Part shown: piece by piece, positions 15,091 through 56,898 of the stretch
How positions within the stretch are numbered: the stretch's first letter is position 1
Layout of the letters: each line of letters starts with the position of its first letter
NCBI GenBank assembly: GCA_001938485.1
Contig: MQRK01243359.1
Location: 1 to 59,305 of the forward strand
DNA: 59,305 bases
DNA from: Girardia tigrina
Lineage: Eukaryota
Reading direction: 5' to 3'
Made by a program: the position numbers and the translations under genes
The notes under the pieces: generated by a model
Seen by the model: only the letters and a program-made list of their open reading frames with translations
What the model was told of the DNA's origin: nothing
Databases searched by the model: none

Positions 15091-16471
15091 TTTTAAATTT
15101 GAAATATTCCAATATTTATGACTTCGAGAAATCCTAACATAAGTGTAGTAGCAATTGATTCAATAAAAGCTCTTGTGTTAGGTACAATGTTTCTTTCGAG
15201 TATTAAATATAAAATCTATTTATTTATTTATTTCGATTAGAATCAATTAGCATTTGAGGAATATTTTAAATTTGGTATGTTGAAATTGGTTTGTTGAATT
15301 TTGTATGTTGAGTTTAGTATTTGGAAATGTGTTTCTCCCACCCAGATGGAAAATTGATATTTTGGATGTTCACGATAAATAATTACTCGAGTATAATTTA
15401 TATTTTAAAGTACAGCATAAGGTATTTAAAAAACTTTAAAAATATTAAATCGTTTCAAATTTTCATATTAAAATTTAAATAAAATAAATAGCTTTAACTA
15501 AGTTTTGAATTAAATAAATGTTCTTTCTTTACGTAAAATCATTTTTCAAATAAAATTAATATGTAGATAAAATTATTACTAAAATTACAAAATTTGAACA
15601 TTAAAAATAAAATCTGAAAATAATGAAAAATTTGTTCGAATTGTTTATTAAAAAACATTAACTAAAATTCATCAATTTAGAACGATGTCGAATGACGAGA
15701 GTTTTGCTGAGAGTTGTCCAAATGACAATTCTGATTGTAATGAAAATAAAAGTTCGAAAACTCATGTTGGTGTTCTTAATTTGGCATGTAAACACTATTT
15801 TAATAATATATTTTTGATTTTAAAAATTATTAGATTTATAATTTTTGAATTCTTGACAATCAAATGTAAAAATTACTATGAAGACAGAAAGATCAAAATC
15901 GTATTTATTAATCTGATAATTGGAAAGAAACAGTTGTTGTAAGACGTAGATCAAATAGCTTCCGTTATTCTAAATATTGTTGAAAAATCTTTCAGTTCTG
16001 GGGAGCTAGCATCTTAATGTAAGGGCATCTTAATTCGATGATTGTTTTGGATTGAGAATTAAAAAAAATGTAAATAAAAAATTATTTGAAATAAAAATAT
16101 ATATTTTTAGAATTTCAAAATTTTACAATTATTTTTGTATAAAGAATATATATATATATATATATTTGTTTGTTTTGTGGAAAAGTTGATTTGTATTGTC
16201 GGCAAATTTTTTGTATTAAAGATTATATAAATAATTTTAAAAAATCGTTTGTTTTAATTATAATAAAACGTTCTGCCGGCGTTTAATTCGCGATTTTGAA
16301 TTGTGATAAATTTGAAATCTATTATTTCATAATTACTATGAATCTCATGAATTTGAATTTGTAATACGAAATTCAGTTAATAAAATTGATTAATTACAAT
16401 AAGAAAATTGGTTCTATTAAGATTCCTTATCAGTTGATTTTGAATTTCAATTTCGAATCGTTACCGAGTGT

Positions 16472-17734
16472 TAAAGACTGAGTGCGAAAAATATTACTAA
16501 CTTTAAATCTCTACAACTCTAACATAAATTCACAAATTACAAAAAACTACTCAAGTTGGCTGTTGCTTGAATAAATCAAAATAAAATTCATTTTAGTATT
16601 CATTTTTTCAACTTCATTTTTCATGAAAATGTCGTCAGAAACAGAAAGTCGCGAATTAATTATTCGTTTATTTCAAGAAAATCCACAATCAAATCAGAAA
16701 ACAGTTTCTAATGTTATTAAAAACTTCAATGATAACTTGAACGTTTTCAGAAAAATAGGTTCAAGAAAAAGAAATGGTTTTTCATGTACATAGAATGTGA
16801 AGAAAGTAAAGGCTCTCTTAGAGAGTAATCCTCGACTATCAAATCGAAAACTGGTAGTTAATGCGAATTTTAACGAGAAAACAGTTCGGAAAATTAAACA
16901 GTCTATGGGTTTAAAAACGCATAAAGTTCAAACAGTACCAGACCAGAACGATAACAAGAACGTAAAGGTGCAGCAGCGAGTCAGAAAGTTGAAATCTGGT
17001 TTTCTTGCGAAGAAAAAATGTTGCATTGTGGATGATGAGACTTACGTACTCTGCGAGTTTTTCCAGCTACCCGGACAAGAATTTTAATCTGCAACTAAGA
17101 GAATCTAGAATCTAAAATCTAGAAGCAAGAAAAATCTAAGTTTCTCAAAGAATTTCTTGTTTGGCTGGCTATATGTGGATGCGGGAAAAGGAGTAAATGC
17201 ATTGTCACGTCTGGCACAATAAACACAGAAGTATTTGTGAAGGAATGCTTGCAAAAGTGTTTATTACCATTCATAAGTCAGCACGGAGGTCTTACTTTCT
17301 TTTGGCTGGATTTGACATCGTGTCACTATGATAAGGCAGCCAAGAAGTCGTACAAAAGAAAATAATATCGATTTTGTGCAAAGAGAGGCAAACCCATCAA
17401 ATTGTCAAGAACTTCGTCCAATCAAAAGATATTGGCCCCTGGTAAAAAGGCAATTAAAGACGACAAACAAGAGGGCACAGACAATTGCAAATTTTCGGAA
17501 CAAGTGGAATAATGCAGCTAAAAACGTGACAGAAACTGCAATTGCAAGTCTAATGGCAGGCATTCCAGAAATCCTCGTAGAATTTATTAAAAAAATAAAT
17601 AATCTTTCTTAGCTTACTAAAATTATTTTGAATAAAACACATTTTTCTAAACTGTCGATATTTTTTCAATAAAAAATATGATTTTGAAGATAGAGGATTT
17701 TAAAGTTAGTAATATTTTTCGCACTCAGTCCTTA
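16472..17734 (+). mobile_element. ITmD37E (DD37E) Tc1/mariner-superfamily element, copy 1
   Basis: About 34-bp TIRs (AGGACTGAGTGCGAAAAATATTACTAACTTTAAA), TA flanks, VDDETY, FWLDLTSCHY...NCQELRPI. 37 residues between the second D and the E position once the frameshift is corrected. Confidence 0.92.
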
Positions 17735-18349
17735 CAATCCACAAAGTAATTTCGAATCATTAATTAAATAAAACGAACAGTGATTTGTTTGAATATTTTC
17801 TGTCCATTTTTCTACTGATAGAATTACTCGTACATACAATACATACAACATTCAAACAAAAAATATCAAACCTTCCAAATATTCCTCACAATAATATCTC
17901 AATATCATAATTATTTCCCTTAAAACAGGACTGTCTTTACTTTTTTATAAACGTTAAATGACATAATAATGTTGTATTGATTGAATAACCACAATCGTTT
18001 CTATGGTGACGGTATTTTTAATGAAATAGTTTTTTATTACACAATCAACACGACATCAATAAATCATTTTAAAAGGCTTGAAACTTATTTCATCGACTAA
18101 AAAAAATAAAATTTGCAACTATTTATGGCTTCTTTTAATGACAAATAAATTATCATTTGGCAAAAAATAAATATTTTTTTACAAAAACATAAAATTTAGC
18201 AACAAATTTATTTTATTATAGCAACAAGTTAAATAAAAAAATGCGATAAAAATAATATTAAGAGATAATTGTAATATTATTTCACCGTAAAAACATTATA
18301 TATAAGAAAAATAGATTTACAAAAGAGAAATTGGCTACCAAATGTTTTA

Positions 18350-32330: not shown

Positions 32331-35283
32331 GCATATTTAGTTTACCATTATAAATGTCACAAGATTAAATTGTGTTGTAGATTGTCCGAAAATTTGCCAG
32401 TAGATTAACTCCTGGTCAGGTTTATCGAATCAGTTGAAAAGCGTTAGAACGGTGACAAAAATTCATGTTATAGTAATAAACAGATTTTAAAGATGAATTT
32501 ACAGTGTTTCGTGCATAAAAATGAGAATACACTTCCTAGCTGGATGAATCCCGGAAATTTATAACTGCGGAGATAATGAAATTTCAACGAGAACATTGAA
32601 GCATTCTCAAAATATTCCAAAACATCTATCTCTAAGATGCTTTCAGAAGCGAAGGCAAATTTTGTTTGCTTCTCCGATTTTGAATAAATATATTAAAAAA
32701 ACCAAATAAGTAAAAATAATGATTTTAATTTTACAACTGTTTTACAATATATATATATATATATATCTGGCTATAAAATAATTTGAAAAAAAAGAATCTT
32801 TTAATATTAAATAAAAGAAAATGATTTTTTTCGTATTTTCTAAAATCAGATAGAAATAATTTTGAATTTGAAAGATATAGATGAAAAACATGTCATAAAT
32901 ATAAGATACCAAAAGAACTGTTTTAAATAATATTTTTGAAATATAAAAATTAAATTTTATAAAAAACTTGTCCTCAAAATTTAAATAATTATTATTTTAA
33001 TCCAATTTTAAGAAATGTATATATGATTGAACTTCTGAAATTAAAAGTATTTTCAAATTAAATATTTAATATTTTTACGAAATAAAAAATAATTTGATAA
33101 TATTTTATGTAAATGATAAAACACTAAGAAAATAAAAAATATGAAAAAAAATAAAATTATTTTAAAAATAGTACTGAAATAAATTAGTTTTGCCAAAAAT
33201 ATTGTACAACAGATTTGTTGATAAAATCAAAATCTTATTTTGTGTATGATTAAAAATATATTATTTTTAACATAGAAACGTATAAAATATAAATAAAAAT
33301 ACCTTTCTCAAAGAATTACTCAAAAAATAAGTATTATATATTTATGACACTTTGTCATTGCGACTTCAATGGGATATTATTTCTAAGCTTTCGCTGACTT
33401 TGATACAAATGAAAAAAAGGAATTATTAATCAGATATAGATAATATTATTATTTTATAATCAATCAAGTTTTGTTTACTGCTTAAAGGCGCGTCTCAGTT
33501 TGAAAAAAATTAAAAGCAAATTTCAAAAGAAATTTATAGATTAATAAAAAAATGAAAAACAGAAATACAAAAAATATTTTATATGTATATATAATTTAAT
33601 TTTAGATGATGTTTGTTTGAAAACTGAACAATATAAAAAGTAATATATGGTAAATTATTTCGAAAAAAGTTTACAAAAAACAAATATTATTAAAGGTCAT
33701 TCGAACGTCAATATAATTTTAGGATTAACAAATATTTTATTAAACTAGATTTTAAAAATTGTCGTGAATAAAATTATAAATAAAATTATTTTGCATTTAT
33801 TTTCATTTAAAAATAAAATTTTGGAATTAAAAAAAATTAAAATCATATTGTATTTAATTTTATTAAATGAAGCAACAAAATCAAATATTGTATTTGAATA
33901 TTTAAAATTAAACATTACGAAACTAAAATGAGAAACAATTAAAGTAAATTTTACGTTAATAAAAATTATAATAAATCAAATATTAAAGACCAAAATAAAC
34001 TTAACAAAAAAGTGTGACAAGTAAAAAAATTAATTTAAAACTATAGACATCAATTTGTAAAATAAAACTTTATATCGATATTTATATTTAGTATTTTTAT
34101 TTATAACTGGTTTGTGCAAAATAAAACATCGCTCCTGAAAATTTTTTTAAAAATAGTTAATTGTTAGAAATAAATTTTAGTGTTACGAACTCTCTTATTG
34201 ATCACGAACCTAACACCTGTATACATTCTTACGAAGACTCTATTGAATTATTCTATCTTTCTTTCACTAACAATAACGTAGAGAAGATTTATAAAAGTAA
34301 TCCTTAAAGATAAGAGAATATTCCTGCAGCTTTTTCAGGAATATGTAAAATAAAATCAACTATAAATATTGTCTTCAAAAGTGTTTCACGATGATTATAA
34401 ATGTGAAAATTATAGAAAAGGGTAAACGGTAAATGCTGTGCAAAAATAACTAGTTTGTCTATTGGGTCTTGTTAGAATTCTTTAAGAAAAAGCAAAACCC
34501 TCTATCCGTACAAAGTGATTTGAGTTCACAAATATTCCAATGATTTAAGTACCGCATAAGAGATGAGACCTTAGTGCCATGTTTTATTCTTAAGAACCGT
34601 CAATTAACCTATCAGACTTTATCAATTCAGAACATACTCTCTATCGTAAGTCCTCAGTAATCCATTGAAGGTATGGTACATCCCATAAAAACAAAAATTA
34701 GAGTTGCAAAACAGCCTCTACAATTAATTAATCTCCCTTTAAATGAACGTCATTATTGTTTGTTTTAACAAGATTCTGTCTCTTCCCAAACCAGTTGATG
34801 CAGTATTTTTTCAGAATTTGATGACTATATCCATTTTGCTTATAAGGTCTCTTGATTTCACGTCCATAAGTTATTCCATTTTCAGTTTTATTATAGAAAA
34901 AATTGAGAACAATTTAATCTCATTTATCAAACAGAAGAAATGGAGTTAGAAGACTAATTGTCAAAGATAGCTTAGTTTAATAAGATATTCTTGAATAACC
35001 TCTCGGATATTTTGCTGTATAATAGCGTTTAATCATTATGAGATAACTTCTTCAGGTGTTCTTAATAGTGTTTGAAAGAATGAAATGCCTAACCATTCTA
35101 AAAACTTCAAAGACAACATGTGGAAGAAAAAAATTATTTTTTAACTGTCAAAATATATTAAAATCTCCTAGTCCATCCTTTATTGTTATAGTGTATGTTT
35201 TGCATTTTATCTTCATAGAACTTTTAAAGAAGCTTTATCTGTACAGAACTTTGACCTGCTAAGAACTATATATTTTAAATCAG

Positions 35284-36515
35284 TAAGGACTGAGTGCAAA
35301 AAATATTACTAACTTTAAAATCCTCTATCTTCAAACCAACATTTTCGATTGAAAAAATACCGACTGTTTTGAAAAATGTGATTAAATCAAAATAATTTTA
35401 GTAAGCTAAGAAAGATTATTTTTTTAATAAATTCTGCGAATTTTTCCGCAATGCCTGCCATTAGACTTGCAATTGTAGTTTCTGTCACGTTTTTGGCTGC
35501 ATTATTCCACTTGTTCCTCTTGTTTGTCGTCTTTAATTGCCTTTTTATCAGGGACCCATATCTTTCGATTGGGCGAAGCTCTGGAAAATTTAGTGGGTTT
35601 GCCTCTCTGCACCAAATCGACGTTATTGTCCTCGTACGACTTCTTGGCTGCCTTACCATAGTTGCACGATGCCAAATCCAGCCAAAAGAAAGTAAGACCT
35701 CGGTGCTGACTTATAAATGGTAATAAACACTTTTGCAAGCACTCTTTCACAAACCAAATGAGATAAAGCATTTTTTTCCCAAATAGCCGACAAAATAAGA
35801 ATTTTTTCGGGAAATTTAGATTTTTTCTTGCTTCTAAATTTTTCTTCAACTTCTCCTCTCTTAGATGCTGAGTAAAATTCTTGTCTGGGTAACTGGGAAA
35901 ACTCACAGAGCACATAAGTCTCATCATTCATAATGCAACATTTTTTCTTCTCAAGAAAACTAAATTTAAATTTTCTGGCTCGCTGCTGCGCCTTTACGTT
36001 GTTGTTATCGTTCTGGTCTGGTACTGTTTGAACTTTATACGTTTTTTTTAACCCACAGACTGTTTAATTTTTCGAACTTTTTCCTCACTACAATTTACCG
36101 CCAGTTTTCGATTTGATACACGAGGATTTCTCTCTAAGAGAGCCTTTACTTTCTTCACATTCTGTGTACACGAAAAACTCTTTCTTCTTCCCGAACCAAT
36201 TTTTCTAAAAACGTTCAAGTTCTCATTGAAGTTTTTAATAACATTAGAAACTGTTTTCTGACAAACCTTTGTCTTTCTGGTAATTGTTTTCTAACTTGAT
36301 TGCGGATTTTCTTCAAATAAACGAATAATTAATTCGCGACTTCCTTTTTCTGTCGACATATTCATGAAAAATGAAATTTAAAAAATGAATACTAAAATGA
36401 ATTTTATTTTGATTTATTCAAGCAACAGCCTACTTGATTAGTTTTTTGTAATTTGTGAATTTATGTTAGAGTTATAGAGATTTAAAGTTAGTAATATTTT
36501 TCGCAACAGTCCTTA
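35284..36515 (-). mobile_element. ITmD37E element, copy 2 (inverted relative to copy 1)
   Basis: Same TIRs and TA flanks. MNDETYV, FWLDLASCNYG, FPELRPIERY. Confidence 0.92.
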
Positions 36516-36547
36516 AATACTTGATTACGTGAAGGATTTATTGTGCT

Positions 36548-40480: not shown

Positions 40481-40657
40481 ATATGCAACCGTAAACTAAA
40501 CGTTAATTTAATAGTGTTCTAACTATTTTTCAGAAAGTTGAATGTTAAATGTTTCAAATGTTACACCGAATAAAGCTGTTTCGCGAAAAATATAAATTTA
40601 AATAAATTTAAAAAATAAATAAATAATGTGTACTATCTTCAAAGAAAATAACAACAA

Positions 40658-41420
40658 ATGTCGAAAACGATTAACGTTAAAATTTCCCCTGTTGAATCGA
40701 AACTCGAGTTCTCGGTCGCTGCCAACACAACCGGCGATAAATTGTTTGAGCAAGTTGTGAAAACATTGAACCTGAGAGAAACCTGGTACTTCAGTTTGCT
40801 CTTCAAAGACTCCAGAAGATATCCGACGTGGCTCAAGTACAACCGACAAATCATGTCTCAAGACGTCGGTAAACAGTACCCGCTCCAATTCAAATTCTGC
40901 ATCAAATACTATCCCGAGGAAGTCAAGAACGAATTAATCCAAGAGACGATCCAGAGACTGTTTTATTTGCAGGTGAGGAACAATATTCTTGAAGGCACGA
41001 TCTACTGTCCGCCCGAGACGAGTGTCCTGTTGGCTTCATACGTGTGCCAATGCAAATACGGAGACTTCCGTGAGGAACTGATCAGTGATCCCAATAACTA
41101 AATTAACACCGACAATTGGATTTCCCTGGAGCGAAATTACAAACGTGTCTTATTCGAATAGAAAATTCACAATTTAATCGTCAGATAAAAATAGTTCGAA
41201 TTTCATTTTCAATACCGACCTCAGTCGAATCAACAAGACCATTCTTCATATGTCCATGGGCAGCCACGATCTCTATCTAAAGAGACGTGAAGCAGACACG
41301 ATTGAACTGCAACAAATGAAAGCTCAGGCTGAGGAAGATCGAAAAAACAAACAAAACTTTAAAGATAAAATCACGAGAGAACGAATGGCGAAAGAAGAAA
41401 TGAGAGAAAATTAATCGATG
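40658..41420 (+). pseudogene. ERM (ezrin/radixin/moesin)/merlin-family FERM pseudogene, intronless and internally deleted
   Basis: MSKTINVKI...LRETWYF...KYYPEEV..ELIQE...IYCPPETSVLLASY, then after a deletion and frameshift [12 protein letters not shown]...MGSHDLYLKRR..DTIELQQMKAQA. Contains stops. Confidence 0.9.
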
Positions 41421-41945
41421 TGGAAATGAATTTGAAAGACACAAACGAAATCCATTTAGAAACAAGAAAATCAATTTCAAATTTCTTTCGGAAAAATATC
41501 CGTTTTTCAAAGACGTTTTCAATAATAGCAAAAATCATGAAGAAATAACGATTGATTTCAAATCTCCATCGCATATCGCTGCGATCAGTCGAGCGTTATT
41601 GTTAGACACGATGAATTTGGACTTGGATGAATTCCGTTGGATCGATTGATTCCGACAATTCCGTTGAGAATGAAGTATATTTTGTGAATTGAAGATTTAC
41701 AGTCACTGGCAATTAACAGTGACTTAACATCGTTCGTTTGAAAAATTCAAATGAAAATTGGAAATCTAAAAATAAATAGCCAATTAAAAATCATAAAAAA
41801 CGTTTAAACAGATGATAAAAATAACTCACAGCATTTAAGAATAGTTTATTTTATATAAAAGAATGTTCTACCCCTCATACACACAAAACACACATACAAT
41901 ACATACATACAGAGACAAAAACACACCTCATACACACCTGATTTG

Positions 41946-43344
41946 CCAGCGTTTAAGAGTGAATCCAGACTTTAAGAGTAAAAAAATTAAATTTCAAAAA
42001 TGCTGCAAAATTACAATTTATCGTCCGTTAGCAGTGCCGATGACATTGAAATAAGGTACTTTATTGTTAATTATGATATTTTATTAAATAATCATAGCAT
42101 GGATACCGAGGACAGCCAAAAAACACAACCTTGTAGGATAAAGAAAACTCGCAAATCGTAATTTTTATTTACAATTTAAAATTAAAATAATAAAATTATT
42201 CAAGAATAAGTCTAATCGACAAAGAAANNNNNNNNNNNNNNNNNNNNNNNNNNNNNNNNNNNNNNNNNNNNNNNNNNNNNNNNNNNNNNNNNNNNNNNNN
42301 NNNNNNNNNNNNNNNNTATAAATATCAAAAATGCGGTCTCCTATCGGTCGGTAAACATGGAGGCCACAAGAAATCCATTATTACCGACGAAATCGGCGAG
42401 ACGATAATTCGGTATGTGGAGGAGAAACCGCAATCCATATTAAGAGAAATGAAAAGATATATTGAGGAGAACAGCGAAATCAATATATCGGAATCCACAA
42501 TTTCCCGCTTCCTCACCGGTAAATTAATTACCATTAAGAAGATCAGGGGCTCCATCCAAGAACGAAATTCTGATCGAATGAAGGACCTCCGATTTCAATA
42601 TACCTGCCGATTTATGAAGGAAGATTGGCGAATGAGTCAATGTGTTTACATTGACGAAATCGGATTTAATCTATGGACCAGCCGCCAATTCGGTCGTNNN
42701 NNNNNNNNNNNNNNNNNNNNNNNNNNNNNNNNNNNNNNNNNNNNNNNNNNNNNNNNNNNNNNNNNNNNNNNNNNNNNNNNNNNNNNNNNNNNNNNNNNNN
42801 NNNNNNNNNNNNNNNNNATGCCAAATATCAATCGTTCATAAACGATTTATCGAGGATTCTGCCAGGGACACCGCATTATTTAATCCAGGATAATGCGAGA
42901 ATCCATTCCAACACTGTCTCCAATCATGAAATGGTCCATTTACCGCCATATTCTCCATTCCCCAATCCAATTGAGGCATTTTTCGCAAAAATGAAGCGGG
43001 AAGTCAGGACAGCAATAACAAACCATCCAGGCCTCCTGACACTAAGCCATCATCAAAGGCTGGTCATTTTGCAGGAGAAAATCGAGGCTGTGGCAGCAAA
43101 TGAAAGCAACAAAGATATGTCCAATTACTTCCATCATCCGAAGAAATTCTTTGTTGACTGCATTCTGAAGAACGATATCCACGGTGATTGAANNNNNNNN
43201 NNNNNNNNNNNNNNNNNNNNNNNNNNNNNNNNNNNNNNNNNNNNNNNNNNNNNNAAAAAAATCTTACTCTTTTAAATTTAACAAATAAATTTATCAGCCT
43301 AATTAAGAAAAAATCAGAATCCGCCATTTTCTCTTAAATGCTGG
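41946..43344 (+). mobile_element. IS630/Gambol-like Tc1-superfamily element (gapped assembly)
   Basis: 14-bp TIR CCAGCRTTTAAGAG, HTH region ISESTISRFL, VYIDEIGFNL, IQDNARIH...LPPYSPFPNPIE. Confidence 0.8.
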
Positions 43345-43579
43345 TTAACTACAGTTAACCGCATGACACTGTATTAGACGGTTGCTCGTTGTCTAAGGAT
43401 CACCAGGTCAATATATTGGTTGCGGTGCGTCCTGTATATATCCAAAATTTGGAGCCTCAAAAAAAATTGGACGGCGAATTAATGGTTGTGTGACTCGAAC
43501 TTTTTTTGTGTGTGTGTTCGGGATTTGTTTTGAATGGTTCGATCTTGTGAGTGTGTTGTGTGTGTGAACGTGACTAAAT

Positions 43580-44080
43580 TTGTTTAATTCATCTGATAGT
43601 CAAACTGGCAATTTGAAACTCAAAGAACTTTTATTCTCCAAACCGAATATTTCTCTCATTCTACTCGACATCATTCTCAACTACAACATTGACGAATCTC
43701 ATCGATTTTTCGCCGTAATTCAACCGAAAAATCTGATCGAAAAACACTGGCAACGAAGCGTCAACTTCCCCGACAGCGATAAGGAAATCATTCACCGACA
43801 ACTTCTCCGCTCGTCTATCCAAGTGAACGCGCTGTCGTTCTCGAAATTCGTCAACTTGATCGCTGAAATCATCGCCAAAATCAGGAATGGCAGAATTTAT
43901 TCAACGGTTTGTTCGCCAATGACGCTTGGATGATCATTTACCATGTGTGTCCGGTGCAATCGACCCTCCGCTTGTCCAAAGGACTCGATCAGTTCCGAGG
44001 ACTGGCATCCGTCATTGGCCGACAAAAAGCTGTCAAATGGAAACGGTTCCCGACGATTTTTCAATCGAAATTCTATGCTC
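43580..44080 (+). pseudogene. Importin-11-like N-terminal (IBN_N/HEAT) fragment, intronless
   Basis: RFFAVIQPKNLIEKHWQR...DKEIIHRQLL...IAEIIAKI, frameshift, then EWQNLF...IIYHVC..STLRL....FRGLASVI. Parallels IPO11 RWLAVLYFKNGIDRYWRR...IAVLIAKV...QWPEL...FYHVTKTLASKRL...FYDLASGI. Confidence 0.65.
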
Positions 44081-44134
44081 AATAGAACCCGATCGATAAC
44101 AATCGCTCGTCGATCGGTCTCGAGTTCGATCTGA

Positions 44135-44310
44135 TCGATACGAAAAAAATGCGTCTTCAAATTCAAGGAGAAATACAAAATAATACGATTGCACAATTTT
44201 CTGTTAAACAGGAGGGGTGTTTGCCCTTTATCGTGGTCTGAGTGCTGAAGAGATTCGTCAGGCATCTTATGGCACTGTAAAAATGGGTTTATGTGATAAA
44301 ATCGAAACAA
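44135..44310 (+). pseudogene. Mitochondrial carrier (SLC25, UCP/KMCP1/dicarboxylate-carrier-like) repeat-1 fragment, intronless
   Basis: IDTKKMRLQIQGE...KQEG(frameshift)VFALYRGLSAEEIRQASYGTVKMGL. Confidence 0.8.
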
Positions 44311-45049
44311 ATCGAATATGTAAAATGACGAGCGAATCACAGCGATTTGAATTCATTAAATTTTGGATGGAAGGCGACTGCCGATTGTTGTGGATTGAGA
44401 ATAGAGTCCAACGTTCTTTGAGGATGAAAACCGATGAGTTAAAACGTGAGATTCAAATGTTTTTGTCCCCCCGACCTGATAGTCTTTCCCCACCGCCGGC
44501 GCGCCGCAGCCACAAAAGTGCTGCGCCTGTTCTTGCATCACCAAAAGCTCTGTATCAAACTCTGAGTCATTGAATTTGGCATATATAATGTCAACTACAC
44601 ACTTATATTTCAGAACAAAACAATATTTTTCGTTGAAAAATATTATTGAGCTTTAAATTCAAGGAAACATTTTGAATAGTTGTGACGTTTGGGCATTAAT
44701 TTTCTAATGCAATTTTTTTTTAAAAATTAGCTCTTTATTACAATAGTTTGTATCCGAGATCATTCAAACAAAAAAATTTACTAAATAAATAAATTAAAAA
44801 AATTTTAAATACAAATATTATTTACAACAAAACGTCGTAATACTTTTTTTTAATTATCATTGTCAAATAAATTTGTTTTTATTTAATAATTAAAGAGATT
44901 TTAGTTTCGTATTTATCGATGCTATTAAATTATAAACATTATTTATAAAAAACAATATATACATTAAATAACTTATTAAAAATCTGATAATTAAATATAA
45001 ATGAATGATTGGCATATAAATCTCAAAAAGTAATATAAGCTTATTTCAG

Positions 45050-46097: not shown

Positions 46098-48971
46098 TCA
46101 ATTCAACTCAAGGTCATGTCTATTCATTTTATGGGAACCATATGCAATTACTCTTTCTCTTCCACATATGTCTTTCTGTGATAGCACCGCTCCTATTGTA
46201 TCAAAACTTGAGTCTGTATCGAGTATAAAGTCTTTTGAAAAATCAGGATATGCCAAAATTGGTGTCTTAATCATTCTTTCTTTTAATTTTTGAAAAGCGT
46301 CATCATATTCTTCAGTCCAAATCAGTTTTTTATCCTTGCTCTTACCACATAAGCTTTCTAAAACCTTTGCATATCTAGCGTAATCCTTTATGAATTTCCT
46401 GTAGTAATTCGTCAAACCCAAAAAGCTTCTTAAATGTTTGATACATGATGGGTTTGGAAATTTTCTAATTGCATCAATCTTTGTTTTATCTGTCTCAATA
46501 CCTTCTTTACTTACGGCATATCCTAAAAATTTCGTTTTTTCTACTAGGAATTGAAATTTCTCTGTATTTATTCTCAAGCCGGATTCTTTAATTTTTTCAA
46601 ATACGTTATGTATTCTTTGAAAATGTTCTTCTCTATCTTTTGCAAAAATCAAAATGTCATCCAAATATACGACGGCTTCTTTCTAATTCAAATCTCCTAA
46701 AACTTTCACCATTAATTTTTGAAAGGTAGCTGGAGCCGCTACAATTCCAAAAGGCATTCTTTTAAAACAGTATTGACCATTCTTTGTTGAAAACGCAGTT
46801 TTAATCTTTGAATCTTCTTCTAATTCAACCTGATAATATGCATTTCCCAGATCGATTGCACTAAAATATTTTGCTCCATTCAACGTGTTTAACATGTCAA
46901 CCACATTTGGCATGGAAAATGCCGGTCTTACCGTAATTTTATTTAACTGTCGAAAATCGACACATACTCGGATGTCTTGTTTCTCTTTTTTCCATACACA
47001 CACCAGAGGGAAGTTCCATGGAGAACTACACTTTTCAATTATANNNNNNNNNNNAAAATTTCTAATGACATCATCTAGTTTCTCTTCAAAATGTTGTGGT
47101 AGTCGATAAGGCTTCACTAAGACTGGTTCTCCAAGAGTTTCTATTTTGTGTTTCGTTAAGGAAGTTTTCCCAACATCCCAGCCATGAATATTGATTTATA
47201 TTATGTTAATAGTCTCTTTAGTTCGTTGTCAACTTTGGTGTTAAATATTTCTTTAATTCTCTTTAGTCTGTCATCATCTGTTGGAATATCTCTAATCATC
47301 CATAATATCACTTGAATCTATAGTTTCCTTCTTTAGTTTTATTCCAAATTTGTCCAAAAAGTCAACTCCTGCTATCATTTCTGGGTAGAGTTCTTTGACT
47401 ACATAAAACTCTATATTTTTTGTACTCCTTCAATTATTACTTTTAATTTAACAATTCCATAATTTATAAGTTCTGAATCATTTGCACAATGAATGCGTTT
47501 ACTCGTTTTCTCTATCTGAACATCTTTCATACTTTTAAGTATATCTGTGTTAACAACATTTACTTTGGCACCGGTATCCAAAAGACATTCAACATTCATA
47601 TTCTGTGTATTAAATTCAATGCTTGGTCTTCCATTCAATTTGTCATATCTAATATTGAGCTTTAATATTTTCAACATTTCTTCCTGTTTCAACTTTTGCG
47701 ATTTTGTCTTTATATCCTTATCAAAACAGTATGTTTTAAATTCTTCTTTCCAACAATCTAATTCACAAACTTCGAGAGGGGTATCTTCCAACACGCAATC
47801 ACACATACAGTCATACATACCATTACATACACAATCACAAACACATACATTTTTAATTTTTAGTGAAGCACACTGATCACCTCTCCTTGTGATCGTGCAT
47901 CCTCGTTTCCCTGGTCTTTGTCATATACTTGTCTATTATCTGTAAACATTCTTTGCCTCGAGTTTCCTTCATTTGATCGTGTTCCTTCATATTCGTTGTA
48001 ATCGTTGTCATCATGAATTTCTGCAATATCATATCTTCGATTTTGATTCCTTTGCTAATTTCGTGGGTTATTTGTTCTTTGCCATTCATTTTTCCTAGCA
48101 TATTGGTCTCTTTCTTTAAATCTATTCTTGTTCATGTAACATTGCGTCCTGATATGGCCATTTTTATTGTCATAAGAACACTTTATATTTGGACAGTTTC
48201 TTCTGATGTGTCCTTCTTCGTGGCATGCCAAGCATTTAACAACTTTTGAATAGTTATTTCTCGGTTTGTATTCATTATTTCTTTGATTAGTGTACCTATT
48301 TTTCTTTGATGGTTACGTTCTATATAGTGTGGTTTACGTTTACCTACCGTTTTCCATTCATCATGTTTACTTACCGTATTGTATACCGCAACTGTTTCTT
48401 CTTTTTCCATTTTGCGTAGTTCATACATATTTGAAACTACATCTTTTATGTCCTTTGTTTCGGTAGCTCCTCTCAATTTCAATTCTCTTTTCACCTCATA
48501 ATCGTCAACCATATTCATGCAAACAAGGTTGAGCAGCTTTTTCTTAGAAAGTTTACTTTATGTTAATATCGTTACTAACTCTTCGACTTTTTTGAACGTT
48601 TCTTCTGGATCTGAAGATCCCCACCGGAGATTTAAAATATCCTTCATTGTGTCGAGCAAAGATTTTTCTTTCACAAATGCCGTTTTAAACTTTTCTTTAT
48701 ACGTATTTCCATCTGTTTCTGAAAATTTTGTGATTGCTGATGGAGTCATGAAGATCATCACCATCACTAATCTTCTATCTTCTGTTATACCAATAATATC
48801 CGCATAACGTTCGAAATTTTTTATGAAGTGATCTAATTTCGACTTGGATCCATCAAATTTTTCGTGTCCCATAATGTTCGTTGTCACATGAGCTGTTGTC
48901 GCCATATTAACAACATCAATATTAGTTTTGCAACATTTATTATTATCACAAGCGCATTCACTATTTGACAT
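46098..48971 (-). mobile_element. Ty3/gypsy gag-pol (gag, Zn knuckles, PR, RT, partial RNase H), 3'-truncated
   Basis: CLACHEEGHIRRNC, LLDTGAKVN, DFRQLN, DLGNAYYQ, MPFG, YLDD, FILDTDSS...GAVLSQ. Confidence 0.95.
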
Positions 48972-49074: not shown

Positions 49075-52000
49075 AAATCGTATTTGAAACTAATGGGTAC
49101 CGGATGTGTGGAGTCGGACATTCGCTCCCATGGTGAGAATGATACAGACGCTTTCTGGTTAAGGGAATGGACTTTCGGCATGTCGACGGGACCATCTTCA
49201 ATGTGCATACATGGCTTCAATTTGCAAATTTTGACGATGCTGTGGGTGCCATTGAAATCGATGGTTGCAGTGTTGTTTTGTGCATCGAAATGAAGCGTGC
49301 GGTAGGGACCGGTGTATCGGGTTTGCAGTGAGTTAGGGTGCTTCTGAATTAACCAAACGAATTGCGCGTTCAGTAAGTCTTTGGGTACGTGTACCTTATA
49401 AGTGTCCTGTGATGATGGCGCAGTATCCAGATTTTTGAAGTGGCGTCATGCTTGTTCCAAGTGTTAGTCGTTGCTGGGGCAGTCACTGAAAAAGAGTTCA
49501 TTCACGAGTGACGTGTTTGACCTGAATAACATTTGGGCGAGCGAGGAGCCATGGCAACTGCTGGGGATGTTTCGCTAACCCAGTAGAATTAGGGACAGTT
49601 GATTGACCTAGTCTTTGTTGGCTGATATCGTCCTCAAGGAGTTCTTGATTGTGCGTTGAAACCTTTCGACGAGCCCATTAGACTGTGGATTGAACGCTGT
49701 TGTTTTCAGACGTTGTGTTCCCAATCTTTTGAGGAGATTGGTGAATAATTTGGATTCGAATTGGCAGCACTATTCTGTGATGAGGCGTTTGGGGACCCCA
49801 AATCGTGATACCCAATTATTGACTCCGTGGTGATGTTCATCATCGGAAACGCTTCAGGCCAGCGTGTGTTCCGGTTAATGACGGTGAGCAGATATGATTA
49901 ACCGTTGCATGGTGTTAGTGGACCAACGATGTCCATGTGAACGGTGTCGAAACGGCTACCAGTCGGGAAGCTGAGAATGGGCGGTTTCGTGTGTCTTGTC
50001 GTCTTGCTGGCTTGACATTGTATGCAACTTTTGCACCATAACTTAACGTTCCGACGCATGTGTGGCCAGATAACCTTGGTGCGCAAAAGTTCATATGTCG
50101 CTTTGAAACCATTTGGTGAACAGCCTTGAAGGCCTCTTGACGGAGGGCGGGACCCAATATGGGGCGTATGCACCCAGCGATGGAAGTGTCGAAATAGACG
50201 CGACCGCGTGCTGTTGGCCGTTCCTTGAAGATAGCTAGGTCCTTGTCCGAAGGGGGGTTCTGTTCTAAGATCTCGTGAGTGAACAGAGGTTCAAAGTCTA
50301 AGGCTGCCAGTTCGATTCGTGAGAAACAATCGGCTACGACATTATCGGCACCTGCGATGAATTTGATATTGAAATCGAATTGCGAGAGATAACTGATCTG
50401 ACGTAGTGAGGGATTCTTCATATGAAATATCTGCAGGAGCGGTTTGTGATCGGTGAGTACAGTCGATGAACTACCTATGAGGAGGTGTTCGAAGTGTTTC
50501 ACTGAGAGGAATAGACCCAATAGCTCTCTATCGAATATTGAGTATCTGGTCTGAACCGGTGATAACTTCTGAGAGTAGAATTCCAGTGGCTCCGGTGTGT
50601 CCCTTCATGTCTGTGTCAAAACCACTCCTACTGCGATGTTTGATGCGTCGGTCGTCAACGTTATTGGCAATGATCCATCTGGGTATCGAAGTGATGTGGT
50701 GTGTAAGATGACAAGTTTTATTTGCTGAAATGCTTTGATTGCTTCATCAGACCATGACAGAGATTGCTTCTTTGGGCAAGAGGACATGTTAGTGAGTGGA
50801 GTCAGTGTCGCAGAGATGTGCGAGATGAATCTACAACAATAATTTACCAATCCTAGAATACGACGCGGGAAATCGGTTATGGCCTTAATTCGATCTGGTA
50901 GTGAATGAATTCCATCTGCTGACAAGACGTGTCCCAGGAAAGTGACATGCGTCTGGAAAAACTTGCATTTCTGTAGTTTAAGTTTCAGTTGGTGATTGTT
51001 AAGTCTGAAAAGTGTCTTGAAAAGATGCTTTTGGTGTGTGGATGTGTCTGGTGATGCCACAACAATATCACCAACGTATGCTACTGTGTGCGACAGCCCT
51101 TGAAGCACAATGTCAATATGGCGCTGGAATATCTGCGAAGCTTTACGCAGGCCAAATGGCATTCAAAGATATTCGAAGAGGCCAAATGGTGTAAATACGG
51201 CTGTTTTTGGAATGGATTTTTTGTCTACTGGGATTTGGTGGTAGGCCTTGGCCAAATCCAATGATGATAAGATGCTACAGCCGGAAAAACGTTGCAAGAT
51301 GTCACTGATTAGTGGCATCGGGTATGAATCTGAAGTTGTGACCTTGTTCAACCCTCTGTAATCGCCACAAATGCGTATGGAACCGTCTTTCTTGGGAACA
51401 ATCTGTAGTGGTGCTGCTTAAGGGAAGCTGGAACGTCGTACGATTCCTGAAGCTTCGAGTTCAGAGAATTCTTTCTCGGACAGAAGTCGCCGTTCTTGAG
51501 ATAATTCACGGCGACGCTGTCGTAAGGGTGCGCATGGTATGGTGACTATCACATGGTTTGAGATACATTCGGCCGTACGTCCACTTATGTTGGAGTTGTC
51601 AACTGTGTTGGGGAAGGTCCTTTCAATGAACTTTGTAGGGTCGGACAACAAGGTACATACTTGTATGGCAGGTGCTGTGCTAAGCGCTGTTTCTGACTGT
51701 TGAGGTGGAAGTAATTTACGGTTCCTGCAATCAATGAGTAGACAAAAGTTATCGAAGAAATCCGCCCCGAGTATTGGTTGCGTGACATCGGCGACCGTCC
51801 ATTGAAAAGATTGACCCAGTGAGAATGGTCGAATGACAGACAGACTGATCCATACGTGTGGACGATTGATCCGTTTGCAACAGTTAGACGAGAGACTGAG
51901 CGTCGAGTCTGTGGATAGAAACTTTTGGGCAGGACAGAGATGGCGGAGTCCGTGTCGATTAAGAAAGTCATTTTGTTGGCAGAAGGACCAATGACGGTGG

Positions 52001-53188
52001 CATCGCAGATAAAGATACCGCAGCATTTGTACTCCCCTTCTGTGTCAGCTGCGAAAACCGAAGGTGAACTTAGTTTTTTGACGGTTTCTATGAGCAGCCA
52101 GGCGCACACCGTTTCGCCTGATCCCCGTAACGGGAGTGTTGCACACAGACAGTGTCCCATTCAATTTCGATCTTTTCGTCCTTTCAGGTACATCCTGGCA
52201 AGCATTTCCTCGCTTCTTTATCGAATTTTGAGTGATACCAGCACATAATGAGACTGGGTGACCTTTTTCGGCTTGGTGTTGGGTTCTGTTTACGGAACTG
52301 TCGTGATTTCATGTTGTTGAGAGCAGTGTCGTGACTGCTTGCATCTGTGCTTGTAACGTCTCGATTTGTGTGACGAATGTGTCTGGTGTTGCTGGTGAAG
52401 GCAGTTGTGACGGTTGCGTGTTAACGGCAAAGCAAGTATTTGGCTCCGTCAGTTGTGTTTCCATAATGTCATCTGCAACTTTTGCCAGTTCGTTGAGATT
52501 TTTCGTGTTAGTGCCAGCTAGAACAGTGGTGGAAGTGACCACAGAAAAAAACGTTTGAGCAGGTCGTAGTGAGATCCGTTCGTGGTTCCTGGATGGATAG
52601 TTTCCAGGTCCGTCACAATTTTCGTCTAAAAGGTGGAAGGTTTTTGTTGGTCAATGTGTTTTGATTTGAAATATGTGACGAAAATATCGTTGAGTGCCGG
52701 TTGAAATGGTCTGAAAATGTGCTTCTTCAGTTCATCAAAGGGTTTATCGTGTGATCCGATCGTTGGAATATGCAGTGAGATTGATTGCATGATTTCAGGT
52801 GGAATAAGACATAACGTATGATGGAACATAGCAATTTCATTCGTAATTCTCTGCAGGTGAAACCGCATCTCCAGGATTCTTAACCAACCTTGTGGTGTTC
52901 CATCTTTGTCTAAAAAATATGGCTGCGGTGTAGGTGGCAATGAAATAGCGTTGATATCTTGCCCTTGTGTCGGGGTGTCATTCAACCCCCCCCCCCGGTA
53001 AAATGTCATTAACAGTTATGTGTACCTGGTTGGGGATGCCGCACTCGATCCATGTGAGCTGGGGACGCAGGGGTTTTGTGTTCCAAGATAACCAGAGTCG
53101 GCAACCGGGAGTATGTGATAAAATTGTTATGACGTCGTTGATTCATGAGGTGGGTGAAATTCGTAAGTGAGATTCCCCAGATGAACCC
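49075..53188 (-). mobile_element. Second, GC-richer Ty3/gypsy element (gag, PR, RT, RNase H, integrase), disrupted
   Basis: FLIDTDSAISV, LDLAKAYHQ, MPFGL, YVGD (mutated YVDD), TTDASN, TDHKPL, CKSCIQCQ, HMDIVGPL. Confidence 0.95.
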
Positions 53189-53317
53189 TGTAATGTGATG
53201 GTTATGTGATCATTAATAGATGAGGTTATCCTTTTGTGTTGAATGTGTGTGTGGATGATGTTACGCTGGCGTTTGCAATTATGAAGCCCGAACAAAAAAC
53301 CAAAACACTCAGTTACA
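53189..53317 (-). repeat. Candidate short 5' LTR (129 bp) of the second gypsy element
   Basis: TGTAA...TTACA termini followed directly by GGGTTCATCTGGGGAATC, similar to the tRNA-Gly PBS TGGTGCATCGGCCGGGAATC. Confidence 0.5.
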
Positions 53318-53459
53318 ATTAAAAATTCGATTTTTTGATGAAAAATATTAAAATAATTATTAAAAAAGTTATTTAAATTTGAATTAATTACATAATTTTT
53401 ATAAAATGTATTAAAATCATAAATCCTAAAAGGTTTATTATTCGACAACGATATATCAA

Positions 53460-53815
53460 AATCTATCAGACCAAACTGAATTTCCACTGTTTCGATGTTT
53501 GTCACGCGTACCGCGTTTACTGTCCTCGTTCGGCAACCCATGAGTTGATGAGAAGCGGTGTGGCTTCTAAACAGTGAGGAACGATTGAGTCTAAATGGAT
53601 CTCGAAAACGCGTGACTCGCTCGTTCGCGGATCTCGTTGGTGTTGCAGCGGTGTCCGAAGCGGGCCGGAGAACGGTAATTGTAGGTTCGGAATCTGACGT
53701 CAACATTGCTGACTTGGGTGACCGATTACGAGTTTGAGTCGCCTGCATTGAATCAGTGTTTACTTCTGGCACCAGTGAAGTGGGAGTTTCCGTGGCGGTT
53801 CCCATTTGCAAAAAA
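53460..53815 (-). other. GC-rich coding-like island, S/T/P-rich open frame, unassigned
   Basis: Open minus-strand frame with sharp compositional boundaries. No motif recognised. Confidence 0.25.
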
Positions 53816-54874
53816 CAAGGAAAAGACAGAATCGAATACAAAATTTATTGATCACAAAATAAATTTTACACGATTTTTCGGCAGTTCGCTCACGGTTAAA
53901 AAATGTCTAAATTGGTTTGAATTTGGGACACTCGAATTATCTCCGTTGAAACATTAAAACAATTGTTTTCGTTTTTTTATTTACATATTTAATTTCATGT
54001 GGAAAAATTCTTGGGTCGATTGATTCCGATATTCTCTGTAAAAAAAACTTGTGGGAATTAAAATTTTTTAATTATTAAATAGTTTTGCGACAACAAAAAA
54101 ATATAACAAATTTAAATTACATTTAAATAATATTTAAATTTGTGAAAATTTTAGCGTGGTTTGATTTTTTTTGGAAATGTTCACTACAAATCTCATTAAA
54201 TTAATCTCATTAGATTTAAATAATTAGTCAATAACATATCAATCCCTGAGGAGAGTCACCAATCTAAATAGTATACAAACAACGAACTTACAATATTCAG
54301 AATTTTTCCTCAGAATATAAATGGTAATTTTATCAAAAAATCTATTGATAAAATATCTTTTAAATATACTCTTCTTTTATAAAATATGATTTCTTAATAT
54401 CGTTGTAAACCAATTTTATATTTTATCAAAAATTGTCTTCAGCATCTTTACAATTACAAATGCATTTTTCATTACGTTTTTGCTAAATTAATGGTTTCAT
54501 TTTTAAAGAGAAAAAATATCGGAATATAATTAATCTCGAATAGAATTTCAAAGAATATCTAATTTCTTAATGTTCAAATCAAATGACAATGAGATAACAA
54601 TAAAATTAATAATAATTAAAATAATAACAGTACTAATAATAATAATAATCTGTAATTAGTTTAATTTACCAAAAACAATAACGGTCAAGTACCTAAGTAT
54701 TTTATGAATAAAAAGAAATACAAGTAAAACGCAAAATCGATGAATTTCTTAAAGTGAATACACATAATCCGATGCTCAATATCAACACGAGCGGCGTGAC
54801 ACAATAAAAATAAATAAAAATAATGACCTTCAATAAAAAAAGAATTTTAAAATAATAATATTAAAAATAATTAT

Positions 54875-56050
54875 TATTGTTGGTGCGAGAGCGAGTGCCG
54901 TGCGGTCGCGGGGCTCCGGTGCTGGGGATGTAGTGCATCTAGTTCGTGGGTGACGGGAACATAATGTAATCTCACCATAATTGCTGCCAATCGCTTTAAC
55001 CATATAGCTTCAAATTGCTCGTTCGTTTCATCGTGGATAATACAACATCGATAATTATCTCCACAATCGCAATTTTTGAATTTGAGCACAGAACGATGTA
55101 TAATATTTAAAATATCTAATCAGTGGTCGAAGGTATCTTTCACCATGAGCAAAAAGTCTTTTATATTCTCGAATACATGTCTTTAACGCAATTGTTACAA
55201 CTCTCGGCCTGCTCCAATAAAGAAATTTTCCCCATAACAATTGACGATGTCCAGTAATTCCACATCATCACCAAATACGAAAACTGAAATCTGCACAAGT
55301 CACAAATAATCCGAACAATCAACCGAATTGCTCCGCATGACTCAAACAATTGAAATCAAATTAACCAATTATTCCTATCTTTCTATCTATTTTTAAAAAA
55401 TCTTTTTTTAAGTATATAGCATTTAATTTATTTACTACAGAGGCTTTTTGTATCGGTTTTTTAATAGATTATTTATTATTAATTAATTTTTTTTAATCTA
55501 TATAATTTTTCCGCTTTTTTACATTAGGTAATTCTTTATTGTTACGTCATAAAGTCAAAACAAAAATATTTTTTACACATCAACGACTAAAACTGTTATT
55601 GTTAAATTCATCATCCATATGACTTGTTGTATTAGACGCCGAATTGTACTGGCAATTAGTTGATACAAACAATTTGCAAATTCCGAAAGACGATGGTTTA
55701 AATTTTAACACCCGACCGATTGGTGTTGGATAAAGTATTATTTTCGATTGCCGAATTATTGCTTTCGCTGCCAAGTTGACAGTGATTACGTGCTCCAGAT
55801 TTATTATTTCGACGTGAAGCATAAGTTGGAACTAATCCACGATATTCTATTTGTGTTCGATCGGACGAGACATGCTTTATGTTATAGAGGCTGAGCGATA
55901 AATTGAGAAATTTGTTAGCGAGTGCTGCAATCTTTCCAGAAAAAACTCGGAATTTCTGAGCCGAAGAAGTCTTGATACGAAAATATGAATGACGGCCAAT
56001 GACATCCCACATTTGAATTATCCTTGTACTCTCCTCCCCCGGGTGGATCG
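54875..56050 (-). other. Two GC-richer decayed coding-like islands (54875-55350, 55575-56050), unassigned
   Basis: Composition differs from the flanks and frames are stop-interrupted. No confident family. Confidence 0.2.
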
Positions 56051-56200: not shown

Positions 56201-56898
56201 TTAATAATCAATTCACCTGTATATAAATACAAAAATGATGATTATGTAATCGATTGCATGAAATCATGCTACTCAAAAATTCTCAATAAGTTAGTTGAGA
56301 CTACCGATTGAACATTGATTTTAGGGCAATGTGACCTAATTAACAATGCTTCACACGATACTCTCTCCAATATCTATCAAAATGTTTACACAGAATTTTG
56401 AAATTATCAATATTAACATCACATTTACATTTTTCCTATGTTCAACAATATTACTCTTATTCTCTTTTTGACCATGTTCTTGAATTCGTTTACAGAGATG
56501 GCGGACAGTCTTTCCAATGTATGTGGCATCGCACCCATTACATTTATATTCATAAAAAATATTAGAACAAATTGTTAATGGTGTAATAGGTTTATTACTG
56601 AATATATTTTAAATTTTATGAGATCGTGATATAATTTTTAAATTTAATTCATTGTTAGTTGTTTTTTAACAATGCATTTTAAATCATTCAGAATAAGTTA
56701 CAATTAAACAATATTTAGGCATATTATTAGTATCCAATGATCCTTCGATTTCTTTCTTAGATAGATCAGGAGAAGCTAAAGTCTGATTTTTCGAAAAATC
56801 TTTCAAAAATATTTTATCTACTGTTTCCTTTATTAATTTTTCTAGAAAAGATTTCGAATAACCATTCTGTTTTAACAAAGAACTTAGTTTATTAATAC

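What the first reader, a model, noticed from the sequence alone, without database searches (positions are those of the whole stretch)
43580..44573. Mosaic of unrelated, intronless host-gene fragments joined head-to-tail (importin-11-like, SLC25, BACK-like)
Seen: in ~1 kb, all on the + strand, an importin-11-like N-terminus is followed by a mitochondrial-carrier repeat-1 piece, then MTSESQRFEFIKFWME (weakly BACK-domain-like) and a GC-rich tail. Both junction zones are rich in ATCGA/GATCGA words (44088-44141; AATCGA twice at ~44299-44316). The SLC25 piece and everything after it form one open frame (44217-44573). Inference: a chimeric retrocopy built by repeated RT template switching between cellular mRNAs, or a fragment-capturing element. 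Either would be an exon-shuffling route. This is the best candidate here for an undescribed system.
Basis: partly seen in the sequence, partly recalled or inferred. Interest (0 to 1): 0.8.

Follow-up and report, generated by a model that had tools for sequence, protein, structure and literature searches.

The report
Retrotransposon LTR stuffed with host mRNAs
The gene-fragment mosaic is the inside of a lone terminal repeat (solo LTR) of a BEL/Pao retrotransposon whose family keeps copying pieces of spliced host messenger RNAs into its LTR and has spread such mosaics to at least dozens, probably hundreds, of places in what is probably a flatworm genome.

Summary
The mosaic is real but is only the right quarter of a larger unit: a complete solo LTR, window 40577-44543, TG...CA, with an exact 5-bp target-site duplication (AAAGC). 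Elsewhere in the genome the same left end follows a polypurine tract and a BEL/Pao pol C-terminal domain, and the same right end (897 exact matches) precedes an initiator-tRNA-Met primer site and BEL/Pao gag. Only ~17 nt at the left, a middle core and ~105 nt at the right are shared; the rest is variable, sense-strand host cargo. This copy carries ERM, METTL16 (split by a nested Tc1-type transposon), importin-beta, SLC25A14/30 and one unidentified module. The ERM piece lacks at least five introns of its parent gene, so capture was from spliced RNA. The importin-SLC25 joint recurs at 28 or more loci. Not supported: BACK domain, importin-11 assignment, ATCGA as junction signal, the 118-codon frame. 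RT template switching onto mRNAs is known (Tan et al. 2016), but there cargo replaces internal genes; here it sits inside the LTR, spares gag-pol and differs between subfamilies. Verdict: new variant of a known kind.

The parts
40572..40576 (.). Left target-site duplication, AAAGC
40577..40628 (+). LTR left end (TGTTTCGCGA...; only about 17 nt shared by all subfamilies)
   Evidence: preceded by a polypurine tract at other loci
40658..41451 (+). Cargo 1: ERM (ezrin/radixin/moesin) mRNA fragment, residues 1-147 joined to about 230-330; at least five introns absent; found only at this locus
   Evidence: Pfam FERM_N/M/C; PDB radixin 3e-52; parent exons on C217872
41440..41699 (+). Cargo 2, first part: METTL16 exon 1, 95% identical to parent
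   Evidence: PF05971
41700..43371 (+). Nested Tc1/IS630-type DNA transposon at a duplicated TA, imperfect TIRs, DDE_3 transposase remains, three N gaps left unfilled
43374..43470 (+). Cargo 2, second part: METTL16 exon 2 (85% to parent exon on other contigs)
43495..43588 (+). Left half of the LTR's own middle core; the right half (GGCGCAA ... motif) was lost in an about 180-nt deletion in this copy
43585..44132 (+). Cargo 3: importin-beta-family (Cse1/Kap120/importin-7 group) N-terminal fragment, with a 23-nt deletion at 43884 and a stop
44130..44314 (+). Cargo 4: SLC25A14/30 repeat-1 fragment, 14 codons shorter than the parent, frameshift near 44213
44315..44439 (+). Unidentified module (MTSESQ...), shortened here by an about 165-nt deletion; about 130 matches in the genome; probably an older cargo
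44440..44543 (+). Conserved GC-rich LTR right end, ...CATCACCA; followed by the primer site at other loci
44544..44548 (.). Right target-site duplication, AAAGC

Best explanation
Window 40577-44543 is a solo LTR of a BEL/Pao retrotransposon family whose LTR is a skeleton (about 17-nt left integrase end, a middle core, about 105-nt right end) filled with pieces of host mRNAs. Shown: ends, TSD, primer site, polypurine tract and BEL/Pao domains next to the same ends; loss of introns; sense orientation; spread of the same joints to many loci; neutral decay of this copy's importin piece. Inferred: host mRNAs are co-packaged in the element's particles; while RT copies the LTR parts of the RNA (U5/R before the first strand transfer, U3 after it) it jumps onto an mRNA and back, helped by short matches; because the new LTR is templated once and then copied to both ends, cargo lands in both LTRs, leaves the single gag-pol frame intact, accumulates over rounds and survives when LTR-LTR recombination leaves a solo LTR. 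A Tc1-type transposon inserted later.
For: Exact TSD at this copy and at 5 of 10 other complete units, one mismatch in 4 more. Right end + 4 nt + TGGTAGCAGAGCGTGG (few variants) at 48 of 48 pattern hits, control 0; TGGTAGCAGAGC is a published tRNA-Met primer site (PMC3587641). Polypurine tract directly before the left end at about 20 loci, control 0. DUF5641 ends 170-180 nt before that tract at 7 loci, DUF1759 lies about 1 kb and Peptidase_A17 3.7 kb after the primer site. Cargo inside LTRs attached to internal regions: importin 420 nt after the tract on C61622; module between DUF5641 and DUF1759 on C253627; module before end + primer site on C237970 and C225385. ERM parent exons (92-97% nt) are fused here; METTL16 exons 1 and 2 likewise. 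Nine identified cargo genes, all sense; no antisense hit. Seven different left-hand cargo sets in 14 copies; at least nine sequence types after the tract. No poly(A) at joints.
Against: No single contig with both LTRs of one element was read, so identical cargo in both LTRs is inferred. Exact microhomology at the importin/SLC25 joint is only 2 nt; the 12-13 nt overlaps at ERM joints are alignment overlaps, not base-checked. The importin parent seems intronless over the captured part, so it is uninformative. SLC25 intron loss rests on protein-level exon hits on two contigs and RNA-like contigs; the DNA search did not score the parent exons. Start and poly(A) sites are unmapped.
Confidence: 0.85

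Rival explanations
1. Processed pseudogenes made by LINE or Penelope-type RTs, or cDNA patches at DNA breaks, were inserted into existing LTRs at the DNA level and then amplified with them.
For: Also explains intron loss; the window holds non-LTR/Penelope-like remains (58.0-59.2 kb) and the ERM+METTL16 cargo is single-copy.
Against: No poly(A) or internal TSD at any joint; pieces are 5'-biased or internal, not 3'-biased; all sense to the element, where insertions would be in either direction; importin replaced part of an older SLC25 piece rather than splitting it.
Confidence: 0.08
2. The units are not LTRs but short non-autonomous elements that keep only the two integrase ends of a BEL/Pao element and move on their own.
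For: Most copies stand alone: 48 of 897 right ends are followed by the primer site; all 11 complete units read have no primer site or tract.
Against: The same cargo-bearing units abut the tract, pol end, primer site and gag at other loci; without primer site, tract or terminal repeat a unit has no way to be reverse transcribed; solo-LTR excess is ordinary.
Confidence: 0.04
3. DNA-level capture by a Pack-type DNA transposon or Helitron.
For: Multi-gene mosaics with dispersed copies are typical of these elements; a DDE transposase lies inside the unit.
Against: No TIR, no Helitron ends, 5-bp TSD, introns lost, primer site and tract present; the DDE element has its own TIRs and TA duplication and splits the METTL16 piece.
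Confidence: 0.02
4. Misassembly, or one real fusion gene.
For: Fragmented assembly (255,254 contigs); no contig of an independent run spans the whole stretch.
Against: Matching TSD 4 kb apart; the importin-SLC25 joint at 28 or more loci and in contigs of other runs; the right end and flank identical in run X1; separate intact parents exist; substitutions fall 11/19/20 on the three codon positions.
Confidence: 0.01

Closest known systems
LTR-mediated retroposition in animals (Tan et al. 2016, PMC5131818), incl. the two-gene chimera of the Pao element BATUMI and a four-gene mouse retrocopy
   Same: Partial, intronless, multi-gene mRNA pieces inside an LTR retrotransposon; no poly(A); secondary amplification; template switching as the model.
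   Different: There the cargo replaces part of the internal ORFs in every case, giving rare non-autonomous loci. Here it lies inside the LTR, next to intact-looking gag-pol domains, is carried by solo LTRs, and differs between most subfamilies of one family.
BEL/Pao superfamily (de la Chaux and Wagner 2011, PMC3118150); planarian BEL1_SM of the Flow clade
   Same: TG...CA LTR, 5-bp TSD, DUF1759 / Peptidase_A17 / DUF5641 order, purine tract running into TGTT.
   Different: Published LTR medians are 212-754 bp with a maximum near 2.4 kb (Flow 100-812 bp); here 1.4-2.8 kb, mostly host mRNA. Clade not tested.
Maize Bs1 and Sirevirus gene capture (PMC13317346; bioRxiv 10.1101/777037)
   Same: Several host genes captured by one LTR element.
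   Different: Only 3% of Sireviruses carry cargo, without orientation bias; Bs1 cargo is internal. All 11 complete units read here carry cargo, though they were found through it.
Foreign sequence inside LTRs: BARE-2 (PMC13317346); Cassandra 5S RNA, MMTV sag and HIV nef in U3 (from my own knowledge)
   Same: Non-LTR sequence fixed within an LTR.
   Different: One fixed acquisition each, not a turnover of many spliced host mRNAs.
Planarian Burro giant Gypsy elements (PMC6431247)
   Same: Probably the same host group; long LTRs; host-like domains.
   Different: Gypsy, with host-like domains fused into the polyprotein, not mRNA debris in the LTR.
Pack-MULEs and Helitrons
   Same: Works like them as a gene-fragment shuffler.
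   Different: RNA route, no TIR or rolling-circle ends.

Membership tests
Solo LTR | TG...CA ends with a 4-6 bp TSD, no internal coding region, primer site or tract | tested here: met
LTR retrotransposon | tRNA primer site after the 5' LTR | tested here: met
   48 loci; tRNA-Met identity by match to PMC3587641, host tRNA gene not checked
LTR retrotransposon | Polypurine tract before the 3' LTR | tested here: met
LTR retrotransposon | Two matching LTRs on one element | not testable with these tools
BEL/Pao | DUF1759, Peptidase_A17, DUF5641 in order between primer site and tract | tested here: met
   by coordinates on separate contigs
BEL/Pao | RT/integrase tree placement (clade) | not tested
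   no internal sequence was fetched
LTR-mediated retrocopy (Tan 2016) | Partial, intronless mRNA pieces without poly(A) | tested here: met
LTR-mediated retrocopy (Tan 2016) | Microsimilarity at switch points | tested here: inconclusive
   2 nt at importin/SLC25, 6 nt at two deletions, 12-13 nt alignment overlaps at ERM joints; no null test
LTR-mediated retrocopy (Tan 2016) | Cargo replaces internal ORFs between two LTRs | tested here: not met
   cargo lies within one TG...CA unit; no terminal direct repeat
LTR-mediated retrocopy (Tan 2016) | Further rounds of transposition | tested here: met
   same joint at 28 or more loci; different TSDs among family units
Pack-MULE / Pack-TIR | Terminal inverted repeats, long TSD, introns kept | tested here: not met
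Helitron | TC start, CTRR end with hairpin, no TSD | tested here: not met
BACK domain | Profile match | tested here: not met
Importin-11 | Best match among importin-beta subfamilies | tested here: inconclusive

The most novel reading that the evidence does not exclude
The LTR of this family acts as a standing mRNA-sampling cassette that matters to host or element: cargo downstream of the core is transcribed from hundreds of solo LTRs and feeds piRNA/siRNA control of the donor genes in stem cells, or shields the element from silencing, or yields selected chimeric proteins.
Probability: 0.2. Interest if true: 0.85.

Novelty: new variant of a known kind. Interest (0 to 1): 0.68.

Why it matters
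It gives an animal counterpart of Pack-MULE-style gene shuffling that runs through RNA and costs the element nothing in coding capacity, which would explain why capture is common here and rare in published LTR cases. Each LTR is a layered record of RT switches and of which mRNAs enter the particles, so rates, order and sequence rules of capture can be measured from genome data alone. Sense copies of housekeeping genes inside a silenced repeat make small-RNA cross-talk with the donors testable. In practice, dozens of importin and SLC25 matches in this genome are LTR cargo and would inflate gene-family counts and disturb RNAi or read mapping.

Tried and rejected
Rfam: nothing. Fold of the GC-rich end: not better than shuffles, z -0.5 to -1.5, so no structured RNA is claimed. 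TIR search: none. I first read the copy as 5'-truncated at 43495; one search found the true left end. tRNA-Tyr primer site: rejected. Pattern scans of metagenome and viral contigs: none, or 23 chance hits without the primer site. An apparent 1192-codon importin frame on C208948 is mostly an N gap. No homologue for the MTSESQ module. Paper searches for cargo inside LTRs, or in planarians, found nothing; the library is incomplete and the Schmidtea genome paper was not held. Earlier scan notes held nothing relevant. N stretches were not filled. No consensus of the element was built.

Full report
Observation. The three pieces are present on the + strand. 43585-44132 is an importin-beta N-terminus, 44130-44314 a mitochondrial-carrier repeat whose nearest named full-length relatives are flatworm SLC25A14/30, and 44315-44439 a module that nothing identifies. 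The importin subfamily is open. The ATCGA words come from the parent gene. The 118-codon frame is an accident of one deletion, runs out of the element and is closed in sister copies. The host is probably a planarian: an AT-rich 1.43-Gb genome with flatworm best hits (inference).

It is a repeat. A DNA search of the genome gave 66 matches from 983 candidates at 80-95% identity. Copies share a sharp right end and differ in what lies before it. In ten fetched copies a common left end appeared 1.4-2.8 kb upstream, flanked by a 5-bp duplication: exact in five, one mismatch in four, two in one. The window copy has that left end at 40577, with AAAGC on both sides. There is no TIR and no terminal direct repeat.

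It is an LTR of a BEL/Pao element. The right-end 15-mer has 897 exact matches (control 2); this is a lower bound, since the window copy itself differs by a base. At 48 loci it is followed by four bases and TGGTAGCAGAGCGTGG or a close variant, a tRNA-Met primer site (PMC3587641). The left end follows a purine tract at about 20 loci. DUF5641 ends 170-180 nt before the tract on seven contigs; DUF1759 lies about 1 kb after the primer site on two, and Peptidase_A17 3.7 kb after it on one. That these domains mark BEL/Pao is established knowledge; no tree was made. Stand-alone units with a TSD are therefore solo LTRs.

The LTR is mostly cargo. Across 14 copies only about 17 nt are shared at the left, after which seven unrelated sequence sets follow; LTRs still attached to the tract diverge into at least nine types at the same point. 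A middle core with GGCGCRA and GTCGCCATT words recurs in most units whatever flanks it; a promoter role is my inference. The window keeps only its left half. The last 105 nt or so are shared by all. Cargo lies on both sides of the core. In the window: ERM, METTL16, then importin, SLC25 and the unknown module. A Tc1-type transposon sits at a TA inside the METTL16 piece. Other copies carry SRP9-like, RRM, EF-hand, ATIC and claudin-like pieces. All identified pieces are sense (one search found no antisense hit). Cargo also occurs in LTRs joined to internal regions (C61622, C253627, C195041, C237970, C225385).

Capture was from spliced RNA. The ERM parent on C217872 matches as separate exons (residues 2-34, 32-66, 64-108, 101-147 and later ones; 92-97% at DNA level where ungapped), which are contiguous in the window: at least five introns are gone. 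METTL16 exon 1 and exon 2 lie on different contigs and are joined here apart from the transposon. For SLC25 the likely parent exons lie on C250737 and C237970, and RNA-like contigs run through the joint; this case is likely, not base-checked. The importin parent (L006, also in an RNA-like run) has no intron in the captured part. No joint has poly(A).

History. Units with core + SLC25 + module and no importin exist (L026, L035, L041). Others keep a few SLC25 start codons, then importin, then the rest of SLC25, so importin replaced part of an older SLC25 piece. That joint recurs at 28 or more loci, in subfamilies 68-85% identical to the parent protein: one early event, amplified. ERM+METTL16 is found only here. 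Two deletions private to this copy lie between 6-nt repeats; the importin/SLC25 joint shares 2 nt. Substitutions against the parent fall evenly on codon positions (11, 19, 20 of 183 each), so this copy decays neutrally. Contigs of DNA runs X1 and X2 confirm the right end with its flank, X2 the 43372-43538 stretch and X1 the importin-SLC25 joint; RNA-like runs hold cargo-type pieces at low depth, but their RNA status is a guess and their labels differ, so expression is not shown.

Mechanism. Shown: element type, cargo position, RNA origin, sense bias, amplification. Inferred: RT switches to co-packaged mRNAs while copying LTR sequence; the result is copied into both LTRs, does not touch gag-pol, builds up over rounds and outlives the internal region as solo LTRs. 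Confidence 0.85. Rivals are DNA-level insertion of retrocopies into LTRs (0.08), independent mini-elements (0.04), Pack/Helitron capture (0.02) and misassembly (0.01).

Comparison. It works like LTR-mediated retroposition (PMC5131818) and, in outcome, like Pack-MULEs. It fails one feature of the published cases, replacement of internal ORFs, and its LTRs are several times the BEL/Pao medians. Single foreign inserts in LTRs are known (BARE-2; others from memory). I found no report of a family whose LTRs turn over spliced host mRNAs, but the paper library is incomplete, and my copies were found through their cargo, so the share of cargo-bearing LTRs is unmeasured. Verdict: new variant of a known kind, interest 0.68.

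Limits. N stretches were left as they are.

Noticed in passing
window 54878-55367 (-): Sister solo LTR of about 490 bp, TG...CA with a 5-bp TSD; its end aligns with the family end (score 86, shuffle maximum 68); repeated and modular in the genome; coding-like interior without Pfam hit.
   Followed up: partly
L031:3856-4960: Another sister solo LTR with an exact GAGAC duplication, inserted in the same mariner-like repeat that holds the L028 and L031 units.
   Followed up: partly
L008, L011, L016, L021, L005, L032, L036: Other cargoes of the family: SRP9-like, EF-hand, RRM pair (Spen/RBM15-like by eye), ATIC, claudin-like, weak LIM.
   Followed up: partly
G000:C237970:55458-55841: A family LTR with primer site lies on the opposite strand between exons of the likely SLC25A14/30 parent gene.
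   Followed up: no
genome-wide: About 100 further intronless, often broken ERM-like matches at 40-60% identity; may be older captures by another family.
   Followed up: no
genome-wide: Several importin-beta matches in open frames near 1000 codons with one TAG near the start (C163894, C198617, C253210, C208711, C254656, C235454).
   Followed up: no
window 46098-48971 and 49915-53841 (-): Two decayed Gypsy-type gag-pol remains.
   Followed up: no
window 56355-56568 and 58.0-59.24 kb: Non-LTR/Penelope-like RT remains with an inverted copy of one end.
   Followed up: no
window 16459-17735 and 35283-36529: Two inverted copies, about 90% alike, of a Tc1-like element.
   Followed up: no
L034:6989-9993: Polinton/Maverick-like ATPase and neighbouring genes around one family unit (by eye).
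   Followed up: no
L041 (ENA ERZ2272679): An independent metagenome contig holds core + SLC25 + MTSESQ module + start of the right end, without importin.
   Followed up: yes
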